The position numbers were made by a program, and so were the translations under genes. The notes under the pieces were generated by a model. That model ran no database searches. It saw nothing but the letters and a program-made list of their open reading frames with translations, and had not been told where the DNA came from. 64,000 nt of DNA. Origin: Mytilus trossulus. Taxonomy: Eukaryota. The DNA is taken from the NCBI RefSeq assembly GCF_036588685.1, contig NC_086380.1:58156001-58220000 (forward strand), given 5' to 3'. This document shows, in pieces, positions 1,256 to 62,080 of the stretch (the stretch's first letter is position 1; each line of letters starts with the position of its first letter).

Positions 1256-1362
1256 TTTTGAATTTAACCGCGTAATGATACTTATCAGAAAGTACGTACA
1301 GGTCACGTGTCAAATCACTGCATTAGATCAAGGGATAGACATTTTCTGGATCTCAGGTAAAA
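1256..1362 (+). promoter_or_regulatory. Putative core promoter and non-coding exon 1 of copy 1 (intron 1357..5176)
   Basis: Module conserved once per gene; GGTCACGTG at 1301; tctcag|GTAAAA donor at 1357. Confidence 0.65.
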
Positions 1363-1497: not shown

Positions 1498-1511
1498 ACT
1501 TTCGTTTTCGC
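1498..1511 (-). promoter_or_regulatory. ISRE/IRF-E-like motif GAAAACGAAAGT (representative; also at 3926, 12295, 18671, 30963, 32111, 38511; variants at 39261, 48098, 58195)
   Basis: ACTTTCGTTTTC on + is GAAA-AC-GAAA-GT on -, matching the GAAANNGAAA IRF consensus; about 130-145 bp downstream of each exon-1 donor. Confidence 0.45.
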
Positions 1512-1949: not shown

Positions 1950-2135
1950 AGTTTTTCCTTTTGAATGGTTTTACACTAGTAATTTTGGGGTCCTTTATAG
2001 CTTGTTGTTCAGTGTGAGCCAAGGCTCTATGTTGAAGGCCGTACATTGACTTATAATGGTTTACTTTTTTAAATTGTTATTTGGATGGAGAGTTGTCTCA
2101 TTGGCACTCACACAACATCTTCCTATACCTATTTG
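1950..2135 (+). repeat. SINE-like interspersed repeat 3' part (also ~30195-30392, ~31760-31950, ~51155-51345)
   Basis: Near-identical ~190-bp blocks (tttgaatggttttacactag...ggatggagagttgtctcattggcactcacaccacatcttcc) at four positions. Confidence 0.7.
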
Positions 2136-2187
2136 AACACAAACACATGCGATGAGCATATTTCAATACGTAACCGAAGGCTGTGTA

Positions 2188-3799
2188 TGAGACAATATCT
2201 GAAAAAGTCGATTTTCCATGTCCCCAACTTCACCAGCAATTATTTTTTTATTTAACCATCTTTTTTGAAAATTTCAAGTTTCAGTATAAACTAAATTATA
2301 TAATGCACCAACCCCTGACAATTAAACACTCATTCTTATATTTCTTCCAATAAAATATTGTAATTTAAATGTTCAACCCCCCTAAAATCATGTTGTCCCC
2401 TGTGTTTTTTGGAAAACTAAATCATTCAAATAATATCCAAATTTATTAAACAGGCGTCCGATTCTCACATATATGATAAATTATATAATAAACTTGCCCC
2501 TAATTTGTCTTTTTATATTATAACTAGAGCATGTAATAAAATTTTGCAAATTTTAAGAGAACAAAAATTTGTCCCCAGGGGTGATTTCCCTCCTGTTACC
2601 ACTAGGTCTTTTTTACCAGTGGAAACGTTTACAAGACCAAGAGTTATTTTCCCATTATGTATTTTGAAGAGCATCATTTTCTGAATGCATTAGTACAAAG
2701 AAATAGATGGAAAGGCGGCCAGGTTTGAAAATTCAAGCCCATCCAAGGTACGAATTTATAGGAAAATACTTTATGGTGTTCTATCCTGTTATAACCTTTT
2801 TTTACACTTTCTGAGAATAATTTTAAGTGTGCACCACAACATGAGGTGTGTTTTTATGTCATCTTTTTAAATGTTATATGTCACAGGAAATACACTTACA
2901 TTTAATGTGATAAAAAGTACAAAAACTATCGCGTAATTCCTTTCTGTTACGTTCTGTCATATTACCTGATAAAAAGTAACAGCATAACCATCATCAGTAA
3001 CAGGAAGGATGCTAAAGACAATTTCACTAAAGAATCAAAAAGTTTATCTACTATATGCCAACCATTTCATTTAATTTATGTTATCACCACCTTATCAAAT
3101 AAATTTCAAAATAATATACAGTATATTGAATAAATAAATAGGGTTTTTCCCTTTGATAACAGCAGAGAACATTGTGCAATTCTAGTATAGTAGATAGTAA
3201 CAGCAAGGAATTTATTTTAGAATTTTTCATTACCTAGGCAGATTTTTCATCTTGCAAATACAGTTTCAAAGGATAAATGACATTGTTTGCTGTTATCTTC
3301 CAATTGTGACCAATCTATAATGATGTTTTTTTCTTAAACTTTAAAATAAAGCAGAAAAATCCTTTCTGTTACCAACTCTATCCTGTTACCGTTGTCCTGT
3401 TACTCAAGACTCTTTCATGTTACCGACATATTTGACTATATTTAAGTATATTTCTAAACCTTTTGTATTGCAAATGCTAAAATCAATAATTGGCATTTGA
3501 TAAACTATTGCAGGATATACTAGTAAACCACAAATAATGTCTTAAACTTATTCCTTATTCCCATTAGAAACTTTTTAAAATTGGTTCACTTTGGTAACAG
3601 GAAAGAACTGGATTTTTTTTTTAACCATTTTTAAAATAGCCATTGTTTTCTTATTAAACAATTGTTTGAATTACAGACAACAGTTCCTAGATCTACAATG
3701 TGTGTTCTTCGATTCGTGCTATTAAAATACCGGGTCTAAAAAATTTTTTTTGGGTTTTTTCTCATTGCCAAAAAATCGACTTTTTCAGATATTGTCTCG
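2188..3799. mobile_element. Non-autonomous Tc1/mariner-type DNA transposon in the copy-1 intron
   Basis: 28-bp TIRs (T/C)GAGACAATATCTGAAAAAGTCGATTTT; TA duplication; empty site ctgtg-ta-tatgactgc present in the copy-4 intron at ~31980. Confidence 0.85.
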
Positions 3800-5177
3800 T
3801 ATATGACTGCAATGCTTTGAACACTAACACATGATTGATGAGTTCCTAGCATATGAAATTAATTATAATGAGTTTTAATTTTTCATATTTAATGCAAGTC
3901 AATAAAAACAATAACTTTGTATTCTACTTTCGTTTTCGCTTCGCATATAATGTTAAAATATTCAAACATTGGATATGTGAATAAAAAACACAGATTATTG
4001 ATAAAAATAAACCACGAAGTTTCACTTAATTTTTAAAATGTTTAAGGACCTTTAGATCTGCATATATCATCATTCACAATTACATTGTTAATTAAGAACA
4101 CTGATTATACAGTATGTATCTCCTATTCAATTTGATGTTTTACCAAATTCGAAATACTTTCATCCTTCAAAAAGTATGCACTCAGTAAATACAGAAAAAC
4201 AAAACAAGTAATGAATAAATTACAAACTTGAGATCACTTGAGTATTGTGTTGCGTGGTTGATATTTCATGCTTAACCATGTTTATAGTGGAAGGGTAAAC
4301 AAATACAATAGATATGTACATTCGCTATCAATGACAGGACATTTGAAATGTCACATGAACATGATAGTTTAGTAGAGGGATTGAAGTAACAGATTTGGTC
4401 TTGTAACAAGCCACCTAAAGTCCCTTCAGAGAGTTTTTGAAAGCGTTGAATAATGTGCCGAGAGCTTTACATTCGCCTTAACATAGTCATCAGATTTAGT
4501 GCACTCATTCAGACCGGCAGTTGTCAGTCGATGTAAATTTGTATTTATAAACACTCTAGTATTAACACTACACAGCCAAGCCTTAATAGTGAATGAGTTA
4601 TTAATTGAACGGGAGAGGCCATGGAATGATCATATTTTCATGCATAGTCAAACCCTTTTAGTATGCCTTTTGACCTTGCTTCTAATTGTACTTTTGTTGA
4701 TCTAAGACCCTTCTTGGTTTAATTCCGTGATAGTACGAACAAAGTTTTACTTGTTTCATAAGTAACAATATGTGTTGCATGACACTTGAAATGGCACAGT
4801 TCTATGCGAAATATCAATGTTATATTTATCTTGTCAAATTAACTTTTTTACCTGTATTTCTAAAATTATCGTGACAGTGAAGCAGAAACTTGTGTTCAAG
4901 AAAAAAAGGAGATTTTAAATGATAATTAAAAAAAACGCAACAATATTTTTTAGTCGACAGTATTACATGCAAATATGCAACCTAAGCACGCACATTGTGT
5001 GCCAAGAATAATTATGCTTACATGACTTGCGACAGCAAGACTTTATAGAACCTTTATTTTCATTTACATAATTAAGGTAACAACCGGTGAATGAAAAACA
5101 TATCTAATGATTTGTCTTACATAAGACAAATTTTGGTTAAAAGCAATTTTATTCTTTTGAAATTTCTTTTTTGTAGC

Positions 5178-6866
5178 ATGTCGAGTAAATTAACTGTATG
5201 TGGAGTATGTGATTATCAGAACATTAACAAACCATCAGTTGCCTGGTGTTCAGAATGTGACGAAGGACTTTGTGAAGAATGTAAAGTGCATCATGCAGCT
5301 TCAAAGGCGACCAGAAACCATAGCATTGTCCTACAATCCGATTTCCAAAATCTACCTTCTAATGTATTGGAAATTACTCAAACATGTCCAAAGCACGAAG
5401 AAAAATACCAGATATTTTGTAGGAAGCACGATTGTCCATGTTGTAGGCTATGTGTTGTTGAAACACACAACGATTGCAAAGATTTGAACGCGATAGAGGA
5501 TGTAATTAAGAATGTAAAATCTTCAAGTGCATTCTTAGAGATGGAACAATTATTGAAAGAACTTTCCGAAAATTTGCAGAATATAAGAAAAGATAGACAG
5601 AAAAACATTAAAAGTCTGACGGAGAACAAAACAATCATAGAAAAGGAAGTTCAGCAGGCACGAATATTGATTAATAATCATTTGGATAAAATACAGGAAA
5701 GTCTGATGAAAGAGCTTTTTACCGCAGAGGAAAAGGAAAAAAAGAAAATAAGCAATTTAATATCATCAATACAAGAGAAAGAAAAAGAGATTACAGACTA
5801 TCAAACTACTCTTGATAGAATAAAAAAGCATGCCTCAGACCTCCAGACATTTTTGGTTATGAAGCACATTCATCGAGATGTCACGAACAAAGAGCAATTT
5901 CTGGAATCTCTAATAAAAGAAGAGAAACTGAACCATATTTCAATAACTTGGAAAAACGAAAATATTACGGAGACCCTACCAACTACAATCAAGAAGATAG
6001 GAACCATAATATTAGAAACCAGGGCAGGTGAAGCAATATCAACAAGTAGGAAGTTAAAACAAGCACAGATAATGGCGCTTACTGCACCTATTCCTATTAT
6101 TGATGACATCAAACTTACTTTAGGACAAACCGTGAAAACAATTGGAAATGATATCAAAAGCTGTTGCTTATTAGCTGATGGAAGAATGATTTTTTCATGC
6201 TATCTCAGTTGCAAAATTCACGTGTTCAAAACCAGCGGGATTTTGGATTTTACACTTGAGACAGGATCCATGACATCTCATATCCACTTTATCGAACAAA
6301 GTCAAAAACTTGTCGTAACAACTGGGCCTTACAACCAATGCATTAAGATTATCGACATGAAAAACAGAAAAACTGAGAAATCTATTGTTGTTGGATCAGA
6401 GATTTATGGAATTGTTCATAAAGACGGACAATTGTTCTATAATGGATATCATGGTGGGTTGCGTGTTGTAAGTGTAGATGGCCAATTGAGTAAACGGTTG
6501 GTAAATGTTACTTTGAAACAAAATAGCAGCATTGCAATATGTTTACATCAACTTTATTATATAGGCGAAGATGATTCAATATCATGCTGTGATCTTGAAG
6601 GTGGTGTTAAATGGAAATTAGAGCAGAAACCATTCCTTTCAAACATACGAGGCATAACAGTGGACAATTACGGACGTGTTTACGTATCAGGATTTTGGTC
6701 TCACAATGTAGTCGTAATTTCACCAGATGGAAACAAACATCGATTACTGCTGTCAGAGAAGGATGGTCTTCAGAGTCCACAGTCTTTGTTCTTCGACCAA
6801 ATAAATAACAAATTACTTATTACAAATCAACAAACTAACGCATTTGTTTATGACGTTTCAAAATGA
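5178..6866 (+). CDS. RING-less TRIM-like protein (B-box1, B-box2, coiled coil, NHL-like propeller), copy 1, 562 aa
   Basis: ORF 5091..6866 trimmed to the conserved MSSK start, which follows a polypyrimidine tract and TAG acceptor (ttttttgtag c ATG). CGVC..WCSECDEGLCEEC..HH..H = B-box1; CPKH..FCRKHDCPCCRLC..H..C = B-box2; E/K/Q-rich heptads; RGITVDNYGRVYVS / PQSLFFD propeller repeats. Confidence 0.9.
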   Translation: MSSKLTVCGVCDYQNINKPSVAWCSECDEGLCEECKVHHAASKATRNHSIVLQSDFQNLPSNVLEITQTCPKHEEKYQIFCRKHDCPCCRLCVVETHNDCKDLNAIEDVIKNVKSSSAFLEMEQLLKELSENLQNIRKDRQKNIKSLTENKTIIEKEVQQARILINNHLDKIQESLMKELFTAEEKEKKKISNLISSIQEKEKEITDYQTTLDRIKKHASDLQTFLVMKHIHRDVTNKEQFLESLIKEEKLNHISITWKNENITETLPTTIKKIGTIILETRAGEAISTSRKLKQAQIMALTAPIPIIDDIKLTLGQTVKTIGNDIKSCCLLADGRMIFSCYLSCKIHVFKTSGILDFTLETGSMTSHIHFIEQSQKLVVTTGPYNQCIKIIDMKNRKTEKSIVVGSEIYGIVHKDGQLFYNGYHGGLRVVSVDGQLSKRLVNVTLKQNSSIAICLHQLYYIGEDDSISCCDLEGGVKWKLEQKPFLSNIRGITVDNYGRVYVSGFWSHNVVVISPDGNKHRLLLSEKDGLQSPQSLFFDQINNKLLITNQQTNAFVYDVSK

Positions 6867-9600: not shown

Positions 9601-12057
9601 AACAAAACAGACATAATAGGTCAAATTGCAAAAATCAGGGTACAGCAGTTATTACCATGTCACAATCTCAATTAAAAAAACAAACAATATTTAAATAAGA
9701 AGTAAAGTTAACAACCACGTTCATAGCTTACTTATTTCTGAATATTAAATCGACCCATAAAGGATTGAAATATTTGGAGTCCTGTGAATAAATGTCTAGG
9801 TTCACATCAACTCTGGTATAGAATCGCATAACTACAAACGTCACACAGGTAGAAATATCAAATAATTTTGTCGTTCAAAGAATTTTCAAAATTATAATAG
9901 AACAATAACATAATGGCGGGATGTTTAAAAGAACAGAGCCACGTCATACGTACCAAAGAAACACATAAAGTCACACATACAAAGCACACCGGCAGAAATG
10001 AAAGATAGTACAAACATCAAATTGACAGGATGCATCATTACCGAGCCAGGTCAAATGGATATCATAAAAAAACACAAACAGTAAAAGTAATATTAATAAT
10101 AGAACAAGGACATCTTTAGAGAAATTTAATACAGCAAATCATTGACAACTGTTAAGTAATAGTCTAAATAGCAAATGGGAACAGATGGAAAATATAAAAA
10201 CAAATGGCATGGCTCATTCAGTTCACTTATCTGTCACACTTTAAAAGTGCTCTGTATCTATTGTTTATCATTGTCACGATCTGGTAAACTTTGACAAAAA
10301 ACTCCAGATTTGATAAGCTTGAGATCAACAACCACTAAATGACATATTATATGTCAATGATACGTTACAGATGTGTAATAAATATAAAAAAAATATGCAT
10401 GCAAGAATTAGTTAAGTATAAATGCATGCATTAGTTCAATAATTTCGATAACACTAAAATTTCCAGGAAATCGTTTCATATGTTTTCAAAGTAATGATTG
10501 TCATTATGGGGCAGAATTTAATTGTGGACCGTATTCGTTCATGACGGTTTTCTCTGTTCAAATAAATAAAATTGATTAAGAAGTCTCCATGACACAAAAC
10601 AGACTCATTTATCTGGCAAAGTGGAAATGTTGGTTGATAATGTTAAACGTTTGATTTAATCAGTTTTTACGAACTTCATTCCCCTTTTCGAATTTACATT
10701 AAAAATTGTTCTTTGTTAATACCTTTTTATTACATTCTGACTGCAATGACCCGACGCTGTTGCAATTGCATTTAACACAACTTGTGGATTTGGATCTTTT
10801 CACGAAATCCACTTTCCTATCTTATGATAATTATGTCACCCATATGTTAATAGGGGTGAATAAACTCATCATAGATACCCGGCTTAAATTTTGTATTAAC
10901 GCCAGACGCATGTTTCGTCTACAAAAGACTCATCAGTGACGCTCGAATCTGAAAAAAGTTCAAAAGGCCAAATAAAGTACGAAGTTGAAGAGCATTGAAT
11001 ACCAATATTCCTAAAAGTTTGATATATTATTGTTTTTGGTCCGATTTTACATTCCACTTTTTTGTCCAGCTTAGTTCTCGGAGATTACTTGACACACATG
11101 GATAAAAATACGCCATTAAGACATACCCCATCTGTAGAGGTGCACATAGACTTTTGAATTTTCAAGATAACCGTCGTTACCATGGAAACCGTCTAAATGT
11201 GAAAAAATGAAAGAAAAAAAAATCCTTATAAACTCATCGTTAATCAACCCAACCGTAACAGATACAACCCAAACCTTCCCCGCCGTAATAATAATATGAA
11301 CTGTAGAACTGGTTTCCGTTTGAATTTTGAAGATTGCTGCTTTACCATGGAGATTAGGCTAAAAGTGTAATATTGACCCATATCAGATAAAACGTCAAAT
11401 GAACATTTTCTAGCAAATTTTAAGTTCGACCCCGGTTAAATGTTATTGAAATGTTATCTGTCTTTGAAACATTTAGAGTAGCCGTTGTTTACATGGAAAC
11501 AGCAACAACAAAAAATTCATAAAAATAAAGTTCTGTAATCAAGTTTATGTGTATGAGATTAAATACAACTATGTACTACTAAAATCTTCTAGTATGTGCT
11601 AGAAGAAGCCAAAAAAATATGTAAACCTGCTTTTATTCTATACAAAATAGTGATTGATTTCATTTTCTGACTTGAGCAATTTAACTATCCGTTAGGGTTT
11701 CAAGTAAATAGAGGTATGCTTAATAATATATGAAGGCCTTGAGCAACACAGCTGAGCAATGAAAACACACTAAAATCTGGGGGTGATTTGAAAGTAGATT
11801 CTTTTTCATATATACCATCGTATGTAGGAATAAACAGACAGGGCGTATAAACTACTATCACTGTAACAGCATATAAAAAATGGCACACATCAGAAAGTAA
11901 AGATGCATTTGAATATTAAAAATAGTTAATCTAATCTTAAACTTAAATTAAACACCACGAAAAGTGTTCGGCCAAAAATCCCTTTTAAATGTACATTTGT
12001 ATAGCGTCAAGTTTTTACTCGAAACAGAACAGAGAATGATCACGGATAAGGTTGTTA

Positions 12058-13597: not shown

Positions 13598-15286
13598 ATG
13601 TCGAGTAATCTGACTGTGTGTGGAGTATGTGAATACCGAAACATCAGCAAACCTTCAGTGGTCTGGTGTTCAGAATGTGATGAAGGACTTTGTGAGGGAT
13701 GTAGAGAGCATCATGCTGCTTCGAAGGCGACTAGAATTCATAGTATTGTTCTACAATCCGATTACCAGAATTTACCTTCTGATATATTGAAAATCACCAA
13801 CACATGTTCAGAACACGATGAAAAATACGTTATATTTTGTAAGAAGCATGATAGTCCATGTTGTAGTCGATGTGTCGTTGAAACACATAACGATTGCAAA
13901 GATTTAAACGCGATAGATGACGTCATTAAGGATGTAAAATCTTCAAGTGCATTCTTAGAGATGGAACAAATGTTGACAGAACTTTCAGAAAATTTACAGA
14001 GAATAAGAAAAGATCGACAAGAAAACATTAAAATTTTACGAGAGAACAGGACAAACATAGAAAAAGAAGTCCAGCAGACAAGAAGCCTGATTAACAATCA
14101 TCTTGATAGGTTACAGGAAAATTTGATAAAAGAGTTGTATGACGTTGAGAAAAATGAAAACAAAATCATCACAAACATAATATCATTAATAGAAGAGAAA
14201 GAAAGAGAAATTATCAAAAGTCAAACTAATTTAGATAAAGTTAAAAAGCATGCATCAGACCTCCAGACGTTTCTGGCTTTGAAGCACATCCAACGAGATG
14301 TCAGTAACAACGAACAATTTATGGAATCGTTGATAAAGGAAGAGAAATTGAACAATGCATCTATTTCTTGGAAAAATGAAAATGCTTTAGAGATTTTACC
14401 TAACCAAATCAAGAAGATGGGAACCATAATTCTAGATACGAAGGCAGGTGAAGCAACATTAACAAACAGGAAAAACCAACAAGCTCAGATAATGCTGCCA
14501 AATACATATGTTCCTACCATTGATGATATAACACTTACTTTAAAACAGACCATGAAGACAATAGGAATTGATATCACAAGTTGCTGCTTGTATGATGGCA
14601 GGATGATTTTCTCCTGTTTTAATAGTGAACAAATTTACGTCCTGAAAACCAACGGGTCTTTAGATTTTACATTGAATCCTGGATCGCATACTTCGCATAT
14701 ATACTATATTGAAGAAAGCCAAAAACTCCTTGTAGCACCTGGTCATGACTTCACCTGCATTACAATTATTAACATGAAAAATAGAAAAACTGAGAAATCT
14801 ATTAAAGTTGGATCAGAGATTTATGGAATTGTTCACAAAGATGGAAATGTGTTCTATAATGGAGGCAGTCGTGGATTATGTGTTGTAGGTTTATATGACG
14901 ACGACTCTATAACACAGCTAGTTAACGTTAGATTGTCTACATATAGTAGCATTGTCATGTGGTCAGATAATCTTTACTTTATAACCTATGATGATACAGT
15001 ATCATGCTGTGATCTCCAAGGGACATTGAAATGGAAATTAGAGCAGAAAAATATTTTTACAAAGGCTCGAGGTATAACAGTGGACAATTATGGACGTGTT
15101 TACGTATCGTGCTATGGATCTAACATGGTCGTCGTTATTTCACCAGATGGAACCAAACACAGGGTGTTGCTGTCAAAGAAAGATGGTATTAAAAACCCAC
15201 AAGCTTTGTGCTTCGATCAAAAAAGTAACAAGTTACTTATTGCAAACAAATGCAATGACGCATTTCTTTATAACGTTTCAAAATGA
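13598..15286 (+). CDS. RING-less TRIM-like protein, copy 2, 562 aa
   Basis: Same architecture; ORF 13559..15286 trimmed to MSSN after ttttttgtag t ATG. Confidence 0.9.
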   Translation: MSSNLTVCGVCEYRNISKPSVVWCSECDEGLCEGCREHHAASKATRIHSIVLQSDYQNLPSDILKITNTCSEHDEKYVIFCKKHDSPCCSRCVVETHNDCKDLNAIDDVIKDVKSSSAFLEMEQMLTELSENLQRIRKDRQENIKILRENRTNIEKEVQQTRSLINNHLDRLQENLIKELYDVEKNENKIITNIISLIEEKEREIIKSQTNLDKVKKHASDLQTFLALKHIQRDVSNNEQFMESLIKEEKLNNASISWKNENALEILPNQIKKMGTIILDTKAGEATLTNRKNQQAQIMLPNTYVPTIDDITLTLKQTMKTIGIDITSCCLYDGRMIFSCFNSEQIYVLKTNGSLDFTLNPGSHTSHIYYIEESQKLLVAPGHDFTCITIINMKNRKTEKSIKVGSEIYGIVHKDGNVFYNGGSRGLCVVGLYDDDSITQLVNVRLSTYSSIVMWSDNLYFITYDDTVSCCDLQGTLKWKLEQKNIFTKARGITVDNYGRVYVSCYGSNMVVVISPDGTKHRVLLSKKDGIKNPQALCFDQKSNKLLIANKCNDAFLYNVSK

Positions 15287-19976: not shown

Positions 19977-21662
19977 ATGTCGAGTAAATATACTGTTTGT
20001 GGAGTATGCAGTTATCAGCACATTAACAAGCCATCAGTGGTCTGGTGTTCGGAATGTGACGAAGGACTTTGTGAAGAATGTAAAGTGCATCATACAGCTT
20101 CAAAGGCGACCAGAGACCATAGTATTGTACTACGATCCGTCTACCATAATTTACCTTCTATTATATTGGAAATCACTCAAACTTGTCCAAAGCACGAAGA
20201 AAAATACGTTATATTTTGTAAGAAGCATGATATTCCATGTTGTAGTCGATGTGTTGTTGAAACACATAACGATTGCAAAGATTTAAACGCGATAAATGAC
20301 GTCATTAAGAATGTAAAATCGTCAAGTGCATTCTTAGAGATGGAACAAGTGTTGAAAGAACTTTCAGAAAATTTGCAGAGAGTAAGAAAAGATCGAGAAG
20401 TAAACACTGAAAGTCTAAGGGAGAACATAACAAACATAAAAAAAGAAGTTCAGCATACACGAGTATTGATTAACAATCATTTGGATAAGATACAGGAAAG
20501 TCTGATGAAAGAGCTGTTTTCGGCCAAGGAAAATGAAAACAAGAAAATAAGCAATTTAATATCATCAATACAAGAGAAAGAAAAAGAGATAACAGAATTT
20601 CGAACCACTCTAGATAAAATAAAACAGCATGCTTCAGACCTGCAAACATTTTTAGCTTTGAAACACATCCAACAAGATGTCAGGAGCAACGAACAATTTC
20701 TGGAATCTTTAATAAAAGACGAGAAAATAAAACATGTGTCCATTTCTTTGAGAAACGAAACATCTGTTGAGAACCTATTTACCACTATGAAGAAGATGGG
20801 AACCATTGTCTTGGAAACCAAGTCACGTGATGCAACATTAACAAACCGTAAGCATCAACAAGCACAGATACTGATGCCTGCTACACCCGTTCCTACTATT
20901 GATGATATAAAACTTACTTTGAGACAGACTGTAAAAACTATTGGAACATATATCTCTTGTTGCTTCTTACTTCCTGATGGCAGAATGATTTTTTCCTGCT
21001 GCACAAGCGGACACATAAGCGTACTAAAAAGTGACGGGACTTTGGATTTTACATTAAGGACTGAACAACGTACATCTCATATATTCTTCATTGAGGAAAG
21101 CCAAAAGCTTGTCGTAACATCAGGCAATGCTTACTGCATTCAAATGATCGATATGAAAACCAGAATAACTGAGAAATCGATTGATGTTGGATTACGGAAT
21201 TATGGAATAGCTCACAAAGATGGGAAATTGATTTATAATGGCTATTACGATGGATTAAACGTTGTAAATTTAGATAACAACTCTGTTTCCCAGTTAGTAA
21301 AAGTTTCATTATCAAAATATGCCAGCATTGCAATTTGGTCAGATAATCTTTATTTCATTAACAATGATGATTCAGTAACATGTTGTGATATCCAAGGGAC
21401 CTTGAAATGGAAATTAGGACCTGTAGCTGTTCTTAAGACGGCACGAGGTATTACAGTAGACACTTTTGGGCGTGTTTACGTATCAGGCTATACAACTTCC
21501 AATGTCGTCGTAATTTCACCAGATGGAAAGGTCCACAAATTATTGCTGTCAGAGAAGGATGGTTTGGAACATCCGCAAGCTGTTTGCTTTGATCGAACAA
21601 ATAACCAGTTACTAATTGCGAACCATCGAAATGACGCATTTATTTATGACGTTTCAAAATAA
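19977..21662 (+). CDS. RING-less TRIM-like protein, copy 3, 561 aa
   Basis: Same architecture; ORF 19890..21662 trimmed to MSSK after tttttgtag c ATG. Confidence 0.88.
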   Translation: MSSKYTVCGVCSYQHINKPSVVWCSECDEGLCEECKVHHTASKATRDHSIVLRSVYHNLPSIILEITQTCPKHEEKYVIFCKKHDIPCCSRCVVETHNDCKDLNAINDVIKNVKSSSAFLEMEQVLKELSENLQRVRKDREVNTESLRENITNIKKEVQHTRVLINNHLDKIQESLMKELFSAKENENKKISNLISSIQEKEKEITEFRTTLDKIKQHASDLQTFLALKHIQQDVRSNEQFLESLIKDEKIKHVSISLRNETSVENLFTTMKKMGTIVLETKSRDATLTNRKHQQAQILMPATPVPTIDDIKLTLRQTVKTIGTYISCCFLLPDGRMIFSCCTSGHISVLKSDGTLDFTLRTEQRTSHIFFIEESQKLVVTSGNAYCIQMIDMKTRITEKSIDVGLRNYGIAHKDGKLIYNGYYDGLNVVNLDNNSVSQLVKVSLSKYASIAIWSDNLYFINNDDSVTCCDIQGTLKWKLGPVAVLKTARGITVDTFGRVYVSGYTTSNVVVISPDGKVHKLLLSEKDGLEHPQAVCFDRTNNQLLIANHRNDAFIYDVSK

Positions 21663-32793: not shown

Positions 32794-34479
32794 ATGTCGA
32801 GTAAATATACTGTATGTGGAGTATGTGATTATCAGAACATTAACACACAATCAGTTGTCTGGTGTTCAGAATGCGACGAAGGACTTTGTGAAGAATGTAA
32901 AGTGCATCATGCAGCGTCAAAGGCGACCAGAAACCATAGTATCGTTCAAATCTCGGAGTACCAGAGGCTTCCTTCCAATATATTGGAAATCACTCAAACA
33001 TGTTCAAAACATGATGAAAAATTCCAAATATTCTGTAAGAAACATGATATTCCATATTGTAGACGATGCGTTGTTGAAACACATAACGATTGCAAAGATT
33101 TAAACGCGATAGAGGATGTCATAAAGAATGTAAAATCTTCAAGTGCATTTTCAGAGATGGAACAAGTGCTGAAAGAACTTTCAGAAAATTTGCAGAATAT
33201 AATAAAAGATAGACAAGAAAACATTACAAGTATAAGGGAGAACAGAATACAAATAGAAAAGGAAGTTCAGCAGACACGAAGCCTGATTAACAATCACCTT
33301 GATAGGCTACAGGAAATTTTGATAAAAGAGTTGTATGACGTTGAGAAAAAGGAAAGCACAAAAATTAAAAACATAATATCATCCATTCAAGAAAGTGAAA
33401 GAAAGATTACCGAATGCAAAAGTACTTTATATACAATAAAACAACATGCATCAGACCTCCAGACGTTTCTTGCAATGAAACACATCCAGAAAGATGTCAG
33501 AAACAACGAAAACTTTTTGGAATCCTTGATTAAAGAAACCAAAATGAACAATGTTTCCATTACCTGGAAAAACGAAACTGCCTTGAAGATCTTACCTGTC
33601 CAAACTAAAAAGATGGGGACCATAATACTAAATACCAGGGCAGGTGATGCAACACTAACAAACAAAAAGAACAAACAAGCGCAGATGATGATGCCTACTA
33701 CACCTGTTTCTACCATTGATGATATAAAACTTACTTTAAGACAAACCGTGAACACAATTGGACAGGATATCAAAAGTTGTTGCTTATTACCTGGTGGCAG
33801 AATGATTTTTTCCTGCTATAGAAGTAACAAAATTCACGTGCTCAAATCAAGCGGGACTTCAGATTTTACACTTGAGACAGGATCCACAACATCTCATATC
33901 CACTTTATCGAAAAAAGTCAAAAACTTGTCGTAACAACTGGGGAAAACAACCAACGCATTGAGATAATCGACATGAAAAGTAGAAAATCTGAGAAATCTA
34001 TTGGAGTTGGAACAAGGACTTTTGGGATAATTAACAAAGAAGGGAAATTATTTTATAATGGAGAAAGAGCTGGATTATGTTTTGTAAATTTAAATGACGA
34101 CTCTTTAACACAGTTAGTTGACGTTGCATTGTCTACATGTAGCAGCATTGCAACATGGTCAGATCAACTATATTTTATAGGCGAAGATGATTCAGTAACA
34201 TGCAGTAATCTACAAGGAGGAATTAAATGGAAATTTAAGTTGAAAACATTTACAGTTCCACGAGGTATAACAGTGGACAATAACGGACGTGTTTACGTAT
34301 CAGGCTATTGGACGAGTAATGTCATTGTAATTTCACCAGATGGAAGCAAACATAGAGTGTTGCTGTCACAACAAAATGGTATTAATAAACCACAGTCTTT
34401 GTTCTTCGATCGAATAAATAACAAGTTACTTGTTGCGAATACATGCAATTACGCATTTCTTTATGACATTTCAAATTGA
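32794..34479 (+). CDS. RING-less TRIM-like protein, copy 4, 561 aa
   Basis: Same architecture; ORF 32707..34479 trimmed to MSSK after ttttttgtag c ATG. Confidence 0.9.
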   Translation: MSSKYTVCGVCDYQNINTQSVVWCSECDEGLCEECKVHHAASKATRNHSIVQISEYQRLPSNILEITQTCSKHDEKFQIFCKKHDIPYCRRCVVETHNDCKDLNAIEDVIKNVKSSSAFSEMEQVLKELSENLQNIIKDRQENITSIRENRIQIEKEVQQTRSLINNHLDRLQEILIKELYDVEKKESTKIKNIISSIQESERKITECKSTLYTIKQHASDLQTFLAMKHIQKDVRNNENFLESLIKETKMNNVSITWKNETALKILPVQTKKMGTIILNTRAGDATLTNKKNKQAQMMMPTTPVSTIDDIKLTLRQTVNTIGQDIKSCCLLPGGRMIFSCYRSNKIHVLKSSGTSDFTLETGSTTSHIHFIEKSQKLVVTTGENNQRIEIIDMKSRKSEKSIGVGTRTFGIINKEGKLFYNGERAGLCFVNLNDDSLTQLVDVALSTCSSIATWSDQLYFIGEDDSVTCSNLQGGIKWKFKLKTFTVPRGITVDNNGRVYVSGYWTSNVIVISPDGSKHRVLLSQQNGINKPQSLFFDRINNKLLVANTCNYAFLYDISN

Positions 34480-41238: not shown

Positions 41239-42927
41239 ATGTCGAGTAAATATACTGTTTGTGGAGTATGCAACTATCAGAACATTAACACACCATCAGT
41301 GGTCTGGTGTTCGGAATGTGACGAAGGACTTTGTGAAAAATGTAAAGTGCACCATACAGCTTCAAAAGGGTCGAGAAACCATAGTATCGTTCAAATCTCG
41401 GAGTACCAGAAGCTTCCTTCCAATTTATTGGAAATTACTCAAACATGTTCAAAACATGATGAAAAATACCAAATATTTTGTAAGAAACATGATATTCCAT
41501 GTTGTAGACGATGCGTTATTGAAACACATAACGATTGCAAAGATTTAAACGCGATAGAGGATGTCATTAAGAATGTAAAATCTTCAAGTGCATTTTTAGA
41601 GATGGAACACGTGTTGAAAGAACTTTCAGAAAATTTGCAGAGAATAAGAATAGATAGACAAGAAAACATTAAAAGTCTAACTGAGAACAGGACAAAAATC
41701 GAAAAAGAAGTTCAGCAGACACGAAGCCTGATTGACAATCATCTGAATAGGCTACAAGAAAAATTGATTAAAGAGTTGTATGACGTTGAGGAAAAGGAAA
41801 ACGAAAGCATCACAAACTTAATAACATTAATCAAAGAGAAAGAAAGAGAAATTATCGAATGTCAAACTACTTTAGATAAAGTAAAACAACATGCATCTGA
41901 CCTCCAGTCGTTTTTGGCTATAAAACACATCCAACGCGATGTCACGATCAACCAACGATTTCTGGAATCGTTGATAAAAGAAAAGAAAATGAACCATGCA
42001 TTTATTTCTTGGAAAAACGAAAATGCTTTGGACATCTTCCCTGTCCAAACCAAGAAGATGGGCACCATAATATTAGATACCAGGTCAGTAGATACAATAT
42101 TAACCAACAGAAAGAACAAACAAGCACAGATAAAAGTGCCTACTACACATGTTCCTACCATTAATGATATCAAACTTACTTTAAAACAGACGGTGAAAAC
42201 ACACGGACAAGATATCACAGATTGCTCCTTACTTCCTGATGGCAGAATGATTTTTCCCTGCAGTACTCGTCAACAAATCCACGTACTGAAAACCGACGGG
42301 TCATTAGATTTTACATTGAATTCAGAATTCCGTATATCGCATATATACTTTATCGAGGAAAGTCAAAAACTTGTCGTAACAACTGGGATGATCCCCAAGT
42401 GTGTTATGGTTATTAATATGAAGAGTAGAAACACAGAGAAATCGATTGAAGTTGAATCAGAGATTTATGGAATAGTTCATAAAGATGGAGAATTGTTCTA
42501 TAATGGATATAAAAGAGGATTATGTGTTGTAAGTTTAGATGACGACTCTGATACCCAGTTAGTAAAAGTTTCCTTGGCTCGCTATAGCAACATTGCAATA
42601 TGGTCAGAACAACTTTATTTTATATGTAATGATGATTCAGTAACATGCTGTGATCTTAAAGGGACATTGAAATGGAAATTAGAGCAGAAAACATTTCTCA
42701 CAAGCGCACGAGGTATAACAGTGGACAATTACGGACGTGTTTACGTATCAGGATTTGCATCTAACAATGTCGTCGTGATTCCACCGGATGGAAACAAACA
42801 CAGAGTGTTGCTGTCAGAAAAAGATGTTCTTATAAAACCACAGTCTCTTTTCTTCGATCGAAAAAATAACAAGCTACTAATTACAAATCAACGCAATGAA
42901 GCATTTCTTTATGACGTCTCAAACTGA
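41239..42927 (+). CDS. RING-less TRIM-like protein, copy 5, 562 aa
   Basis: Intact ORF starting MSSK after ttttttgcag c ATG; same domains. Confidence 0.9.
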   Translation: MSSKYTVCGVCNYQNINTPSVVWCSECDEGLCEKCKVHHTASKGSRNHSIVQISEYQKLPSNLLEITQTCSKHDEKYQIFCKKHDIPCCRRCVIETHNDCKDLNAIEDVIKNVKSSSAFLEMEHVLKELSENLQRIRIDRQENIKSLTENRTKIEKEVQQTRSLIDNHLNRLQEKLIKELYDVEEKENESITNLITLIKEKEREIIECQTTLDKVKQHASDLQSFLAIKHIQRDVTINQRFLESLIKEKKMNHAFISWKNENALDIFPVQTKKMGTIILDTRSVDTILTNRKNKQAQIKVPTTHVPTINDIKLTLKQTVKTHGQDITDCSLLPDGRMIFPCSTRQQIHVLKTDGSLDFTLNSEFRISHIYFIEESQKLVVTTGMIPKCVMVINMKSRNTEKSIEVESEIYGIVHKDGELFYNGYKRGLCVVSLDDDSDTQLVKVSLARYSNIAIWSEQLYFICNDDSVTCCDLKGTLKWKLEQKTFLTSARGITVDNYGRVYVSGFASNNVVVIPPDGNKHRVLLSEKDVLIKPQSLFFDRKNNKLLITNQRNEAFLYDVSN

Positions 42928-48886: not shown

Positions 48887-50574
48887 ATGTCGAGTAGATT
48901 AACTGTATGTGGTGTATGCGACTACCGCAACATTAGACAACTATCAGTGTGTTGGTGTTCAGAATGCGACGAAGGACTTTGTGAGGGGTGTAAAGATCAT
49001 CATGCAGCTTCAGAGGGGACCAGAGATCATGGTATTGTTTAATCTCTGAGTACCAGAAGCTTCCTACCAATATATTGGAAATTACTCAGACATGTCCAAA
49101 ACACAGTGAAAAATACGTTATATTCTGTAAGAAACATGATATTCCATGTTGTAGACGATGCGTTGTTGAAACACATAACGATTGCAAAGATTTGAACACG
49201 ATAGAGGATGTCATTAAGAATGTAAAATCATCAAATGCATTTTCAGAGATGGAACAAGTGTTGAAAGAACTTTCAGGAAATTTGCAGAATGTAAGAAAAG
49301 ATAGACAAGAAAACATTCAAAGTATAAGGGAGAATAGAACACAAATAAAAAAAGTTCAGCAGACACGAAGCCTGATTAACAATCATCTAGATAAACTGCA
49401 GGAAATTTTGATAAATTTTAAAGAGTTGTATGACGTTGAGGAAAAGGAAAACAAAAGCATCATAAACATAATATCATCAATAGAAGAGAAAGAAAGAGAA
49501 ATCACCGAAAGCCAAACTGTTTTAGATAAAGTGAAACAACACCCATCAGACCTCCAAACGTTTCTGGCTATGAAACATATCCAACGAGATGTCACAATCA
49601 ACGAACAATTTCTGGAATCGTTGATGAAAGAAGAGAAAATCAACAATGCATCTATTTCTTGGAAAAACGAAAATGCTGTGGAGATTTTATCTAACCAAAT
49701 CAAGAAGATTGGAACCATCATATTAGATACCAGGCCAGGTGATACGATATTGACAAGCAGGAAGAAGCAACAAGCACAGATAGTGCAACCTACATCACCT
49801 GTTCCTTCCATTGATGATATAAAACTTACTTTACGAAGGACCGTGAAAACATTTAGAGGTGATATCACTAGTTGCTGCTTTCTTCCTGATGGCAGAATGT
49901 TTTTTTCCTGTTACGCTAATGATCAAATCCACGTCTTGAAAACCGACGGATCATTAGATTTTACATTGAAGCCGGGATCGAAAACATCTCATATAGATTT
50001 TATCGAGAATAGTCAAACACTTGTCGTAACATCTGGCTGTGTCTACAATCACATTAAGATTATCAATGTGATAAACAGAAAAACCGAGAAATCTATTGCT
50101 GTTGGAACACAGATTTATGGAATAGTTCACAAAGATGAAAATTTTTTTTACAATGGGGAAAGTCGTGGATTACATGTTGTAAATTTAGATGATGGCTCTG
50201 ATACCCAGTTAGCAGACGTTTCCTTAACTCTCTGTAGCAGCATAACAACATGGTCAGATCAACTTTATTTTATAAACGCGGAGTCAGTAACATGCTGTGA
50301 CCTCCAAGGGACATTGAAATGGAAATTAGAACTTAACACTTTTCTTACAAACGCAATGGGTATAGCAGTGGACAATTATGGACGTGTTTACGTTTCGGGT
50401 TTTGAATCCAACAATGTTGTCGTGATTTCAACAGATGGAAGCAAACATAGAGTTTTGCTGTCAGGGAAAGATGGCCTTAAAAGACCACAGTCTGTGTGCT
50501 TCGATCGAAAAAACAACAACCTTCTTATTGCAAATCAACAGAATGACGCGTTTATTTATGACGTTTTAAAATGA
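48887..50574 (+). pseudogene. Frameshifted TRIM-like copy 6
   Basis: ATG at 48887 (MSSRLTVCGVCDY...) reads 51 codons to TAA at 49040-49042. gtttaatctctgagtac is 1 nt shorter than paralog gttcaaatctcggagtac. The rest continues in another frame (ORF 49075..50574). Confidence 0.85.
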
Positions 50575-60391: not shown

Positions 60392-62080
60392 ATGTCGAGT
60401 AAATATACTGTTTGTGGAGTATGCGATTATCAGCACATTAACAAACCATCAGTGGTCTGGTGTTCAGAATGTGACGAAGGACTTTGTGAAGAATGTAAAG
60501 TGCATCATGCAGCTTCAAAGGGGACCAGACACCATAGTATCGTTCAAATCTCGGAATACCAGAAGCTTCCTTCCAATTTATTAGAAATTACTCAAACATG
60601 TTCAAAACACGATAAAAAATACGTTATATTTTGTAATAAGCATGATAGTCCGTGCTGTAATCGATGTATTGTTGAAACCCATTACGATTGCAAAGATTTA
60701 AACGCGATAGATGACGTCATTAAGAATGTAAAATCTTCAAGTGCATTCTTAGAGATGGAACAAATGTTTACAGAACTTTCAGAAAATTTGCAAAGAATAC
60801 GAAAAGATCGACATGAAAACATTGAAAGCCTAAAGGAGAAAAGATCCAAAATAGAAAAAGAAGTTCAGCAAACGCGAATCCTGATTGACAAACATCTGGA
60901 TAAGTTGCAGGAAAGTCTGATAAAAGAGTTGTATGACACTGAGGAAAAGGAAAGCACAAAAATTAAAAACATAATATCATCCATTCAAGAAAATGAAAGA
61001 AAGGTAACCGAAGGCAAAACTACTTTAGATACAATAAAACAACATGCATCAGACCTCCAGACGTTTCTGGCAATGACACATATCCAGCAAGAAGTGAGAA
61101 ACAACGAACACTTTCTGGAATCCTTGATAAAGGAAAGGAAAATGAACAATGTTTCCATTACTTGGAAACACGAAACTGCCTTGGAAATCTTCCCTGTCCA
61201 AATCAAGAAGATGGGAACCATAATATTAGATACGACGGCAGGTGAAGTAACATTAATTAACAGGAAGAACCAACAAGCACAGATAAAGCTGCCTATGGTT
61301 CATGTCCCTACCATTGATGATATAAAACTTACTTTAAGACATACAGTGAAAACAACTGGAAAAGATATCACAGATTGCTGCTTTCTTCCCGATGGCAGGA
61401 TGATTTTTTCCTGTTACATTACTCAACTAATTTACGTCATTAAAACTGACCGATCATTAGATTTTACATTAACACCAGGATCGCGTACTTCACATATATA
61501 CTATATTGAAGAAAGCCAAAATCTCGCTGTATCATCTGGTCATAACCCCACTTGCATTACAATTATTAATATGAAAAATAGAAAAACTGAGAAATCTATT
61601 AGAGTTGGATCAGAGATATATGGAATAGTTCACAAAGATGGAAAATTGTATTATAATGGATATAATAAAGGATTATGCGTTGTATGCTTAGATGACGCCT
61701 CTATAACACAGCTAGTAAACGTTACCTTGAATCGATATAGCAGCATTGCAATATGTTCAGATCAACTTTATTTTATAGGCGAAGATGACTCAGTAGCATG
61801 CTGTGCTCTTAAAGGGACATTGAAATGGAAAGTAGAACTTAATACTATTCTTAAAACAGTACAAGGTATTACAGTAGACAACTATGGGCATGTTTACGTA
61901 TCGGGCTATGAATCTAACAAGGTCGTTGTGGTTTCACCAGATGGAAACAAACACAGATTGCTGCTGTCAGAGAATTGTGGTCTTAAAAATCCACAACCTT
62001 TGTACTTTGATCGAAAAAATAACAAGCTACTCATTGCAAACAAATGCAAAGGCGCATTTATTTATGACGTTTCAAAATGA
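60392..62080 (+). CDS. RING-less TRIM-like protein, copy 7, 562 aa
   Basis: Intact ORF starting MSSK after ttttttgcag c ATG; same domains. Confidence 0.9.
   Translation: MSSKYTVCGVCDYQHINKPSVVWCSECDEGLCEECKVHHAASKGTRHHSIVQISEYQKLPSNLLEITQTCSKHDKKYVIFCNKHDSPCCNRCIVETHYDCKDLNAIDDVIKNVKSSSAFLEMEQMFTELSENLQRIRKDRHENIESLKEKRSKIEKEVQQTRILIDKHLDKLQESLIKELYDTEEKESTKIKNIISSIQENERKVTEGKTTLDTIKQHASDLQTFLAMTHIQQEVRNNEHFLESLIKERKMNNVSITWKHETALEIFPVQIKKMGTIILDTTAGEVTLINRKNQQAQIKLPMVHVPTIDDIKLTLRHTVKTTGKDITDCCFLPDGRMIFSCYITQLIYVIKTDRSLDFTLTPGSRTSHIYYIEESQNLAVSSGHNPTCITIINMKNRKTEKSIRVGSEIYGIVHKDGKLYYNGYNKGLCVVCLDDASITQLVNVTLNRYSSIAICSDQLYFIGEDDSVACCALKGTLKWKVELNTILKTVQGITVDNYGHVYVSGYESNKVVVVSPDGNKHRLLLSENCGLKNPQPLYFDRKNNKLLIANKCKGAFIYDVSK

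What the first reader, a model, noticed from the sequence alone, without database searches (positions are those of the whole stretch)
6190..6845. Hypervariable short loops at equivalent positions of the propeller blades
Conserved strands alternate with 3-5 residue patches that differ in almost every copy (order 1-7). After IF(S/P)C: YLSCK / FNSEQ / CTSGH / YRSNK / STRQQ / YANDQ / YITQL. After V..G: PYNQC / HDFTC / NAYC / ENNQR / MIPKC / CVYNH / HNPTC. After YNG: YHG / GSR / YYD / ERA / YKR / ESR / YNK. After YVS: GFWSH / CYGSN / GYTTS / GYWTS / GFASN / GFESN / GYESN. After I.N: QQT / KCN / HRN / TCN / QRN / QQN / KCK. Inference: these follow the same strand in successive blades, so they should map to one face, like the variable loops of TRIM5 PRYSPRY. 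Coordinates given are for copy 1.
Basis: partly seen in the sequence, partly recalled or inferred. Interest (0 to 1): 0.78.

Follow-up and report, generated by a model that had tools for sequence, protein, structure and literature searches.

The report
Hypervariable binding face of mussel NHL propellers
Seven neighbouring mussel genes encode B-box proteins ending in a six-bladed propeller whose loops on one face differ in every copy while the rest is conserved, as expected of a family of receptors that each recognise a different target, though proof of positive selection is incomplete.

Summary
The window (Mytilus, apparently M. trossulus) holds seven tandem genes: two B-boxes, a presumed coiled coil and a six-bladed NHL-type propeller, with no RING. 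Its five patches are the B-C loops of blades 1, 2, 3, 5 and 6 (AlphaFold pLDDT 94.7).

Patch identity among the seven copies is 0.245 against 0.674 elsewhere (permutation 0 of 20000). The D-A loops, which share a face with the B-C loops by strand topology, are variable too. The A-B and C-D loops are as constrained as the strands (omega 0.2-0.35).

Recombination among paralogs is strong. With partition-specific trees, standard site models favour positive selection (M1a/M2a 2dlnL 94; about 8.5% of codons at omega about 3). All 13-22 flagged codons lie in or beside B-C or D-A loops. The N-terminal half gives no signal in the same pipeline.

However, patch-average omega is about 1, and the signal weakens when the synonymous rate may vary between sites (dlnL 4-7; 3 of 35 null simulations reach the observed value).

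Verdict: a real one-face hypervariable surface, probably a diversified ligand-binding face. Selection is likely but not proven.

The parts
1256..1356 (+). Non-coding 5' mini-exon of copy 1.
   Evidence: One contig of run X2 joins 1354 to 5175 with GT..AG ends. A homologous upstream module occurs once per gene.
5178..6866 (+). Copy 1 CDS (562 aa): B-box 1 at 5196-5324, B-box 2 at 5379-5471, presumed coiled coil, then propeller at 6111-6860.
   Evidence: ORF. Pfam PF22586 and PF00643. AlphaFold pLDDT 94.7. Contigs of 4 runs cover it.
6201..6212 (+). B-C loop of blade 1 (res 342-345); reader patch 1.
6321..6338 (+). B-C loop of blade 2 (res 382-387); reader patch 2. Sites 384-386 are flagged.
6444..6458 (+). 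B-C loop of blade 3 (res 423-427); reader patch 3. Site 425 is flagged.
6567..6578 (+). Site 464 is flagged; 466-467 are conserved.
6693..6704 (+). B-C loop of blade 5 (res 506-509); reader patch 4. Site 507 is flagged.
6828..6836 (+). B-C loop of blade 6 (res 551-553); reader patch 5. Sites 551-552 are flagged.
6138..6152 (+). D-A loop from closing strand to blade 1 (res 321-325). Site 324 is flagged.
6261..6281 (+). D-A loop between blades 1 and 2 (res 362-368). Sites 364 and 365 are flagged.
6390..6410 (+). D-A loop between blades 2 and 3 (res 405-411). Site 408 is flagged. Runs X4 and X5 carry an in-frame GAG insertion behind 6398.
6504..6533 (+). D-A loop between blades 3 and 4 (res 443-452). 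Sites 445 and 448 are flagged.
6621..6644 (+). D-A loop between blades 4 and 5 (res 482-489). Sites 484 and 489 are flagged.
6753..6776 (+). D-A loop between blades 5 and 6 (res 526-533). Site 533 is flagged.
13598..15286 (+). Copy 2 CDS (562 aa).
19977..21662 (+). Copy 3 CDS (561 aa).
32794..34479 (+). Copy 4 CDS (561 aa).
41239..42927 (+). Copy 5 CDS (562 aa).
49075..50574 (+). Copy 6: open frame lacking the ATG and B-box 1, with small indels in the coiled coil. Probably a pseudogene or truncated gene; the propeller is intact.
60392..62080 (+). Copy 7 CDS (562 aa).

Best explanation
What it is. The patches are the B-C loops of a six-bladed NHL-type beta-propeller. The propeller forms the C-terminal half of RING-less B-box/B-box/coiled-coil proteins. 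These are encoded by a tandem, Mytilus-specific gene family whose whole CDS lies on one exon behind a small 5' non-coding exon.

How it most likely works. Together with the D-A loops, the B-C loops build one face of the propeller. In solved TRIM-NHL domains this is the macromolecule-binding 'top' face. The strands and the opposite face are a conserved scaffold. One to three exposed positions per top-face loop, flanked by conserved anchor residues, differ in every paralog, so each gene presents its own binding surface.

The most likely cause is selection for different or changing ligands. A repertoire of intracellular recognition proteins, possibly immune, is the best guess. Frequent recombination and gene conversion among the tandem paralogs re-assort N-terminal halves and propeller segments.

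Shown: the gene structure, the fold, the loop identity, the one-face restriction of variability, the recombination and the presence in expression-type contigs.

Inferred: that the face binds ligands, that the variability is driven by positive selection rather than mere tolerance, and any immune role.
For: Fold and family:
- AlphaFold of res 302-562 with 64 paralogs gives pLDDT 94.7, pTM 0.92 and 24 strands; the N-terminal strand closes blade 6.
- The best solved folds are NHL domains of Thin, TRIM2, Mei-P26 (TMq 0.81), TRIM3 and Brat.
- The family profile hits TRIM3 at 1e-14, TRIM2 at 2e-12, TRIM71 at 1e-10 and Brat at 1e-9.

One-face variability:
- Omega by class: B-C 1.0-1.2, D-A 0.85, A-B 0.2, C-D 0.35, strands 0.3.
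- Mean entropy in 19 close and 45 distant paralogs: B-C 1.72/2.44 bits and D-A 1.39/2.25, against A-B 0.59/1.44, C-D 0.72/1.68 and strands 0.73/1.43; top versus bottom loops p = 3.6e-7 and 2e-5.

Site models with four partition trees:
- M1a/M2a 2dlnL = 94, M7/M8 133, M8a/M8 85; 8.5% of codons at omega 3.2.

Flagged sites:
- 13-22 sites reach P >= 0.95 in five set-ups. All are in B-C or D-A loops or in strand residues next to them.

Cross-validation:
- Sites that are fast in one clade run at 1.5-2.2 times the mean synonymous rate in the other clade (p = 1e-6 to 1e-9).

Control:
- The N-terminal 301 codons of the same genes give dlnL 0.2-0.7 and 0 sites, even on a single tree.

Other features of the top face:
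- 19 of 19 genes have a unique set of B-C loops.
- Top loops hold 6-13 aromatic/His residues against 0-2 in bottom loops, and Trp is 3.6-fold enriched at the flagged sites.
- Loop lengths are almost constant.

Literature and expression:
- PMC9634614 (passages read) places the binding cavity of TRIM-NHL domains on the top surface and reports paralog diversity there.
- Contigs of 4 runs from 4 studies cover the CDS but not the adjacent 3858-5039, and one contig carries the GT..AG splice.
Against:
- In recent sister pairs the top loops have pN/pS 0.89-1.0, which is what neutral drift predicts.
- When the synonymous rate may vary among sites, the fast class has alpha 2.2 and beta 2.7. Allowing beta > alpha then gains only 4.0-7.3 log units.
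- 3 of 35 simulations under the beta <= alpha null reach the observed 5.86. All 17 simulations under the fitted M2a model give more (6.8-32). Pure M2a is therefore also a poor description.
- My codon engine fixes kappa and the branch-length proportions taken from nucleotide trees. It is not PAML or HyPhy.
- Partition trees of 100-330 nt are poorly resolved.
- No 3D coordinates were available, no ligand is known, and no expression response to challenge was examined.
- The runs laid are only guessed to be RNA.
Confidence: 0.6

Rival explanations
1. Relaxed constraint only. The top-face loops are simply tolerant of change and drift neutrally after duplication. No selection for new specificities is involved, and the face may have no ligand-specific role in most copies.
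For: - Class-average omega is close to 1: B-C 1.0-1.2 and D-A 0.85.
- Sister pairs give pN/pS 0.89-1.0.
- The alpha-free test gains only 4-7 log units, and 3 of 35 null simulations reach it.
- The closest pair, L002/L019, has dN/dS about 0.9 over the whole propeller.
Against: - Neutral sites cannot exceed the neutral rate, yet 8-10% of codons run at 2-3 times the domain's mean synonymous rate. The same positions do so in two independent clades.
- The loops keep their length and their conserved anchor residues, and they are rich in aromatic residues.
- 7 of 26 B-C sites are under clear purifying selection, so an average of 1 hides faster sites.
- The same positions vary in the 45 distant paralogs.
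Confidence: 0.25
2. Artefact. The apparent rate excess comes from recombination or gene conversion among tandem paralogs (wrong trees), from multi-nucleotide changes, or from misalignment of short loops.
For: - Trees of the N-terminal half and the propeller conflict with 92-100% support.
- A breakpoint scan improves AICc by 402 with three breakpoints inside the propeller.
- The local synonymous rate at the fast sites is estimated at 1.7-2.2.
- Many loop codons differ at 2-3 positions.
- Flank and CDS divergences disagree: L014/L016 has flank K2P 0.014 against propeller dS 0.18.
Against: - The signal is stable with 1, 4 or 8 partition trees and with 16 or 19 genes (dlnL 42-64).
- The equally recombining N-terminal half shows no signal, even on one wrong tree.
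- Loops are unique to each gene rather than shared between non-sisters, which speaks against loop transfer.
- Only a few one-codon indels occur in the loops.
- Raw amino-acid entropy, which needs no tree, shows the same one-face pattern.
Confidence: 0.1
3. Same structure, but the diversified face binds RNA, as in Brat, LIN-41 and Mei-P26. The family would then be a set of post-transcriptional regulators or viral-RNA sensors with different sequence preferences, not protein-binding receptors.
For: - The closest folds and profile hits are RNA-binding NHL domains: Mei-P26, Brat and TRIM71.
Against: - The net charge of the top-face loops is -5 to +2 in the 19 genes. The paper describes a strongly positive top face for TRIM71.
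- Sequence identity to those domains is only 10-16%.
Confidence: 0.15

Closest known systems
TRIM-NHL proteins (TRIM2, TRIM3, TRIM32/Thin, TRIM71/LIN-41, Brat, Mei-P26)
   Same: - B-box, coiled-coil, then C-terminal six-bladed NHL propeller closed by the N-terminal strand.
- The top surface is the interaction face, and it differs between paralogs (PMC9634614, passages read).
   Different: - No RING and no filamin domain.
- Only 10-16% identity in the propeller, and copy 1 itself does not reach Pfam NHL.
- It belongs to a large, tandem, lineage-specific expansion: at least 77 scored full-length matches in this genome, and the 120 listed database hits are named Mytilus or unnamed. TRIM-NHL proteins are a few conserved developmental genes.
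TRIM5alpha and fish finTRIM/btr: variable loops of the PRYSPRY (B30.2) domain
   Same: B-box/coiled-coil scaffold carrying a C-terminal recognition domain whose surface loops vary between paralogs or species, in tandem gene clusters. (The TRIM5 and finTRIM facts are recalled, not from a call. PMC3845644 was seen only in a search listing.)
   Different: - The recognition domain is an NHL propeller, not SPRY.
- There is no RING.
- Positive selection is not yet robustly shown here.
- No virus or other target is known.
Fungal NLRs with hypervariable WD40 propellers (Podospora het-d/het-e, HNWD family)
   Same: A beta-propeller whose hypervariable positions lie on the interaction face, with diversification helped by recombination between repeats or paralogs. 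(Recalled. PMC4986451 and PMC11761791 were seen as listing and abstract start only.)
   Different: - That is a WD40 fold, not NHL, attached to a NACHT NLR rather than a B-box/coiled-coil.
- In fungi the repeats within one gene are highly similar and exchange with each other. Here the exchange seen is between paralogous genes.
B-box gene expansions reported for bivalves
   Same: Regan et al. 2021 (PMC8382680, passage with the table read) list a B-box zinc-finger orthogroup with 8.9 genes per bivalve against 0.1 elsewhere, annotated 'interferon-beta production'.
   Different: The passages I read say nothing about the propeller, its loops or site-wise evolution. Supplements were closed.

Membership tests
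TRIM-NHL (class VII TRIM) | N-terminal RING finger | tested here: not met
   - Pfam finds no RING in copies 1 and 5.
- B-box 1 starts at residue 7.
- The spliced 5' exon carries an in-frame stop and no ATG upstream of the start codon.
TRIM-NHL (class VII TRIM) | One or two B-box zinc fingers | tested here: met
   PF22586 (res 7-49, E 1.8e-6 and 3.2e-7) and PF00643 (res 68-98, E 2.1e-7 and 4.1e-6), both above their curated cut-offs.
TRIM-NHL (class VII TRIM) | Coiled coil after the B-boxes | not tested
   Residues about 100-300 are Glu/Lys/Leu-rich and gap-poor. No coiled-coil predictor or full-length model was run.
TRIM-NHL (class VII TRIM) | Six-bladed NHL-repeat beta-propeller at the C-terminus | tested here: met
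   - The fold has six four-stranded blades.
- The best PDB matches are NHL domains.
- The family profile hits TRIM3, TRIM2, TRIM71, Brat and Thin at 1e-14 to 4.5e-8.
- Pfam NHL matches 28 of 64 family members at E <= 0.01, but not copy 1's own domain.
TRIM-NHL (class VII TRIM) | Filamin/ABP280 repeat before the NHL domain (TRIM2/3/71) | tested here: not met
   No filamin hit in Pfam at E <= 0.1.
TRIM5/finTRIM-type restriction factors | PRYSPRY (B30.2) recognition domain | tested here: not met
   The C-terminal domain is an NHL propeller and there is no SPRY hit.
TRIM5/finTRIM-type restriction factors | Recurrent positive selection in surface loops of the recognition domain | tested here: inconclusive
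   - M1a/M2a, M7/M8 and M8a/M8 are significant.
- Patch-average omega is about 1.
- The test that allows synonymous-rate variation is weak.
TRIM5/finTRIM-type restriction factors | Binds and restricts a virus | not testable with these tools
   No ligand data.
Fungal HNWD/NLR hypervariable propellers | NACHT/NB-ARC nucleotide-binding domain | tested here: not met
   No such Pfam hit.
Fungal HNWD/NLR hypervariable propellers | Highly similar WD40 repeats within one gene | not tested
   No internal-repeat comparison of the six blades was run. WD40 (PF00400) matches only 12 of 64 members.

The most novel reading that the evidence does not exclude
Mussels have turned the NHL propeller into a diversified recognition module. 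On this reading, a very large, lineage-specific, RING-less B-box/coiled-coil/NHL family acts as a germline-encoded repertoire of intracellular sensors or restriction-type factors.

Specificity would be set by one to three hypervariable positions in each of the twelve top-face loops. New combinations would be made continuously by recombination between tandem paralogs, which shuffles N-terminal halves and blades. Expression would be controlled by a conserved IRF/ISRE-like element in intron 1.

This would be an NHL-based counterpart of TRIM5/finTRIM SPRY loops and of fungal NLR WD40 propellers, in an animal without interferon or adaptive immunity.
Probability: 0.35. Interest if true: 0.8.

Novelty: new variant of a known kind. 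Interest (0 to 1): 0.55.

Why it matters
Bivalves resist many pathogens without adaptive immunity, and their genomes carry huge, fast-turning-over families of putative innate-immune genes whose recognition logic is mostly unknown.

This finding shows where the paralog-specific surface lies in one such family: about 15-20 positions in the twelve loops on one face of an NHL propeller. That gives a concrete, testable map for loop-swap, binding and challenge experiments.

It would also add the NHL propeller to the short list of folds (LRR, Ig, SPRY, WD40) used as diversified recognition scaffolds.

Finally, it is a worked example of how paralog recombination and synonymous-rate variation change the verdict of standard positive-selection tests.

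Tried and rejected
Mapping on 3D coordinates. The structure tool returns only confidence and secondary structure, and no model file reached /data. I therefore assigned faces from strand topology.

PAML/HyPhy. Neither is installed. I wrote a GY94-F3x4 engine with kappa and relative branch lengths fixed, so the likelihood ratios are approximations of M1a/M2a, M7/M8 and FUBAR/FEL. The breakpoint scan is a FastTree/AICc dynamic programme with a 150-nt minimum segment. It is not GARD.

Calibrating the neutral rate on 3' flanks. Rejected because flanks and CDS have different histories. L002/L019 has flank K2P 0.086 against dS 0.054. L014/L016 has flank 0.014 against dS 0.18.

Cross-species orthologues. 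No relative above 83% overall identity in another Mytilus species was found for any of the 22 subfamily loci among the 120 listed hits. Nearest pairs are mosaics; copy 1 against P0006 differs at 9-10% of propeller strand and top-loop positions but at 29% of N-terminal positions. No clean orthologue dN/dS was therefore possible. Only the hits of one query (copy 5) were available.

Per-site FEL-like tests. Few single sites are significant on their own (385, 386, 408, 484, 361), so power is low with 19 sequences.

Literature. Six searches found no paper describing hypervariable loops of NHL propellers in molluscs. In PMC7653742, PMC4346834 and PMC10514466 the hits for 'TRIM' were only 'trimmed'/'trimAl'. 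Supplementary tables of PMC8382680, PMC7653742 and PMC10514466 (lists of expanded or dispensable gene families) were closed and may name this family.

Rows dropped. L015, L021 and L022 (fragments or interrupted) were left out of all codon analyses. L005, L019 and L020 (interrupted or N-terminally truncated, propeller intact) were included in the 19-gene sets and excluded in the 16-gene sets. From alignment A2 I left out L021, L022, L030, L035 and L056. L030 and L035 appeared from their end residues to duplicate L028 and L034, and L056 has an aberrant C-terminus. L007 is the window's own copy 1 and enters A2 as the window reference.

The first iqtree call failed on a thread setting and was repeated with one thread.
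Full report
**What is in the window.** The 64-kb window is AT-rich (GC 0.29-0.36). It carries seven open reading frames of 499-591 codons, all on the + strand and spaced 6-13 kb apart. Database relatives are named Mytilus (M. trossulus for identical proteins). The window lies on an 80.7-Mb contig of a 1.3-Gb genome.

Each protein has two B-boxes (PF22586 at residues 7-49, PF00643 at 68-98). A long Glu/Lys/Leu-rich stretch follows, which I take as a coiled coil but did not test. The last 250 residues are a C-terminal domain. The seven proteins are 67-69% identical to copy 1.

Its five 'patches' are five places in the C-terminal domain.

**Gene structure and expression.** Every start codon is preceded by a pyrimidine tract and an AG. 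A 400-bp upstream module occurs once per gene. A contig of run X2 joins 1354 to 5175 with GT..AG ends (a single contig, 24 letters on the short side).

Read across that joint, the frame has a stop and no ATG upstream of the start codon, so there is no RING. Pfam finds none either.

Contigs of four runs from four studies cover the CDS of copy 1. One 1164-nt contig has no difference from the window. None lies on 3858-5039. The runs are only guessed to be RNA, so expression is likely but not proven.

Copy 6 lacks the ATG and B-box 1 and is probably dead or truncated.

**The fold.** I aligned the C-terminal domains of 64 paralogs from this genome (19 close, 45 at about 30-40% identity) and folded copy 1's residues 302-562. 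The result has mean pLDDT 94.7 and pTM 0.92, with 24 strands in six four-stranded blades. The N-terminal strand (312-320) completes blade 6.

Foldseek's best solved matches are the NHL domains of Thin, TRIM2, Mei-P26 (TMq 0.81), TRIM3 and Brat at 10-16% identity. A profile of the 64 sequences hits TRIM3 (1e-14), TRIM2 (2e-12), TRIM71 (1e-10) and Brat (1e-9). Pfam NHL matches 28 of 64 members, though not copy 1 itself.

The proteins are therefore RING-less, filamin-less relatives of the TRIM-NHL class.

**Checking the observation.** All quoted strings are present. Among the seven copies:
- the 21 patch columns have mean pairwise identity 0.245 against 0.674 for the other 240 propeller columns;
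- no patch column is invariant (0 of 21 against 88 of 240);
- each patch has seven distinct strings;
- none of 20000 random sets of patches is as variable.

On the model, all five patches are loops between the second and third strand (B-C) of blades 1, 2, 3, 5 and 6. Within each loop only one to three positions are hypervariable, and they sit beside conserved anchors.

**One face.** In an antiparallel A-B-C-D meander, the B-C loops and the D-A (inter-blade) loops lie on one face and the A-B and C-D loops on the other. This follows from topology. That this face is the conventional 'top' is recalled. The position of the binding cavity on the top surface of TRIM-NHL domains is taken from PMC9634614 (passages read).

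Variability follows this split exactly:
- Mean column entropy in the 19 close paralogs is 1.72 bits (B-C) and 1.39 (D-A), against 0.59 (A-B), 0.72 (C-D) and 0.73 (strands).
- The 45 distant paralogs show the same order: 2.44 and 2.25 against 1.44, 1.68 and 1.43.
- Top against bottom loops gives p = 3.6e-7 and 2e-5.

I could not check this on coordinates, because none are returned.

**Recombination.** The tree of the N-terminal half and that of the propeller conflict at nodes with 92-100% support. A breakpoint scan inside the propeller lowers AICc by 402 with three breakpoints. Flanks and coding parts have different ages. Copy 1's propeller is about 90% identical to a M. edulis protein whose N-terminal half differs at 29% of positions. 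Paralogs therefore exchange segments, and any site test needs segment-specific trees.

**Selection tests: for.** I used my own GY94-F3x4 engine and four partition trees for 19 genes. M0 gives omega 0.47. The site-model results are:
- M2a beats M1a by 2dlnL = 94, with 8.5% of codons at omega 3.2;
- M8 beats M7 by 133 and M8a by 85.

With 1, 4 or 8 partitions and with 16 or 19 genes, the gain from allowing beta > 1 is 42-64 log units. The 13-22 codons with posterior >= 0.95 are all in B-C or D-A loops or in strand residues touching them. None is in an A-B or C-D loop.

Positions picked as fast in the 67-68-Mb clade run at 1.5-1.8 times the mean synonymous rate in the window's clade. In the reverse direction the figure is 1.8-2.2 (p = 1e-6 to 1e-9).

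The N-terminal 301 codons of the same genes, run through the same pipeline and even on one tree, give 0.2-0.7 log units and no site. Recombination alone therefore does not create the signal.

**Selection tests: against.**
The rest of the propeller has dN 0.19 and dS 0.53.
- By likelihood with a local synonymous rate it is 1.0 (alpha 1.5, beta 1.5).
- In sister pairs with nucleotide distance <= 0.2, top-face loops have pN/pS 0.89-1.0, strands about 0.4 and bottom loops about 0.4.
- When each site may have its own synonymous rate, the fast class has alpha 2.2 and beta 2.7. Allowing beta > alpha gains only 4.0-7.3 log units.
- In a parametric bootstrap, 3 of 35 data sets simulated under the best beta <= alpha mixture reach the observed 5.86. 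All 17 simulated under the fitted M2a model exceed it (6.8-32) and give a lower synonymous rate for the fast class (0.39-1.39 against 1.68 observed).

The data lie between the two models. The fast sites change amino acid two to three times faster than an average synonymous site, but their own synonymous changes are also somewhat raised. I cannot say why. Multi-nucleotide changes, very short conversion tracts or estimation noise are all possible.

**Other hints of function.**
- All 19 genes carry a unique combination of B-C loops.
- Loop lengths are nearly constant, with only occasional one-codon indels. The neutral 3' flank of the closest pair is full of gaps.
- Top-face loops hold 6-13 aromatic or His residues against 0-2 in bottom loops, and Trp is 3.6-fold enriched at the flagged sites.
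- The net charge of the top loops is -5 to +2. This does not resemble the strongly basic RNA-binding face described for TRIM71, but it does not exclude RNA.
- An allele or close relative in runs X4 and X5 has an in-frame GAG insertion behind 6398, inside the D-A loop of blades 2-3 and next to flagged site 408.

**Interpretation.** The best reading is a conserved propeller scaffold with a paralog-specific binding face. This belongs to a very large, fast-turning-over, lineage-specific family:
- at least 77 scored near-full-length matches in this genome, 68 of them without stops, out of 2544 first-look candidates;
- no relative above 83% overall identity in other Mytilus species among them.

It works like the variable SPRY loops of TRIM5 or finTRIM and like the hypervariable WD40 propellers of fungal NLRs (both recalled), but it is a member of neither. 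An immune role is a guess. It is helped only by a bivalve-expanded B-box orthogroup annotated 'interferon-beta production' (PMC8382680, passage read) and by a conserved IRF/ISRE-like core in intron 1.

**Novelty.** Six full-text searches found no description of hypervariable NHL-propeller loops in molluscs. Supplements were closed and may list the family. I rate it a new variant of a known kind: a diversified recognition surface, here on an NHL propeller.

Noticed in passing
window 1200-1600; also 12055-12397, 18434-18766, 30677-31068, 38235-38613, 47858-48122, 57956-58216: An upstream module of about 400 bp occurs once per gene, 1.2-3.8 kb before each start codon (75-84% identity). For copy 1 it supplies a non-coding first exon, and a contig of run X2 joins 1354 to 5175 with GT..AG ends.
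   Followed up: partly
window 1498-1511 and the equivalent place of the other six modules: The core CTTTCGTTTTCG (reverse complement GAAA-NN-GAAA type, IRF/ISRE-like) is identical in 6 of 7 units, with one mismatch in unit 7. It is an island of invariance in intron 1.
   Followed up: partly
window 48900-50574 (copy 6): Copy 6 has no ATG and lacks B-box 1. It also has a one-codon deletion and a two-codon insertion in the coiled coil, while the propeller frame is open. Its closest relative is L002, 24 kb beyond the window (dS 0.054, dN 0.049 in the propeller).
   Followed up: partly
L022 (G000:C8:58220160-58221356, just right of the window); L015 (contig C2); L021: Further fragments of the subfamily: a copy truncated after about 400 codons directly beyond the window's right end, a copy with a stop on another chromosome, and one truncated at about 500 codons.
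   Followed up: no
window 1888-2281: Word depth of thousands in contigs of all four runs laid, with many loose ends. This looks like a highly repeated, probably mobile, element inside intron 1 of copy 1. Contigs on 2377-3800 carry about 5% differences, so they are likely copies from elsewhere.
   Followed up: no
window 16989-17327 (+): A 112-codon ORF between copies 2 and 3 whose translation looks like the C-terminal part of a retroelement reverse transcriptase. This is judged by eye and recall and was not searched.
   Followed up: no
window 6398 (copy 1, D-A loop of blades 2-3): Contigs of runs X4 and X5 carry an in-frame GAG insertion and about 1-3% other differences. This is an allele or a close relative's copy with a length change in a top-face loop.
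   Followed up: no
copy 1 (5178-6866) against P0006 (M. edulis): Cross-species mosaic. Propeller strands differ at 9% and top loops at 10% of positions, but the N-terminal half differs at 29%. Propeller and N-terminal halves therefore have different histories across species too.
   Followed up: partly
L014 against L016 (G000:C8, 68.29 Mb and 67.71 Mb): The 3' flanks are 98.6% identical over 1015 nt (K2P 0.014), while their propellers have dS 0.18. This points to very recent exchange of part of the unit between loci 0.6 Mb apart.
   Followed up: no
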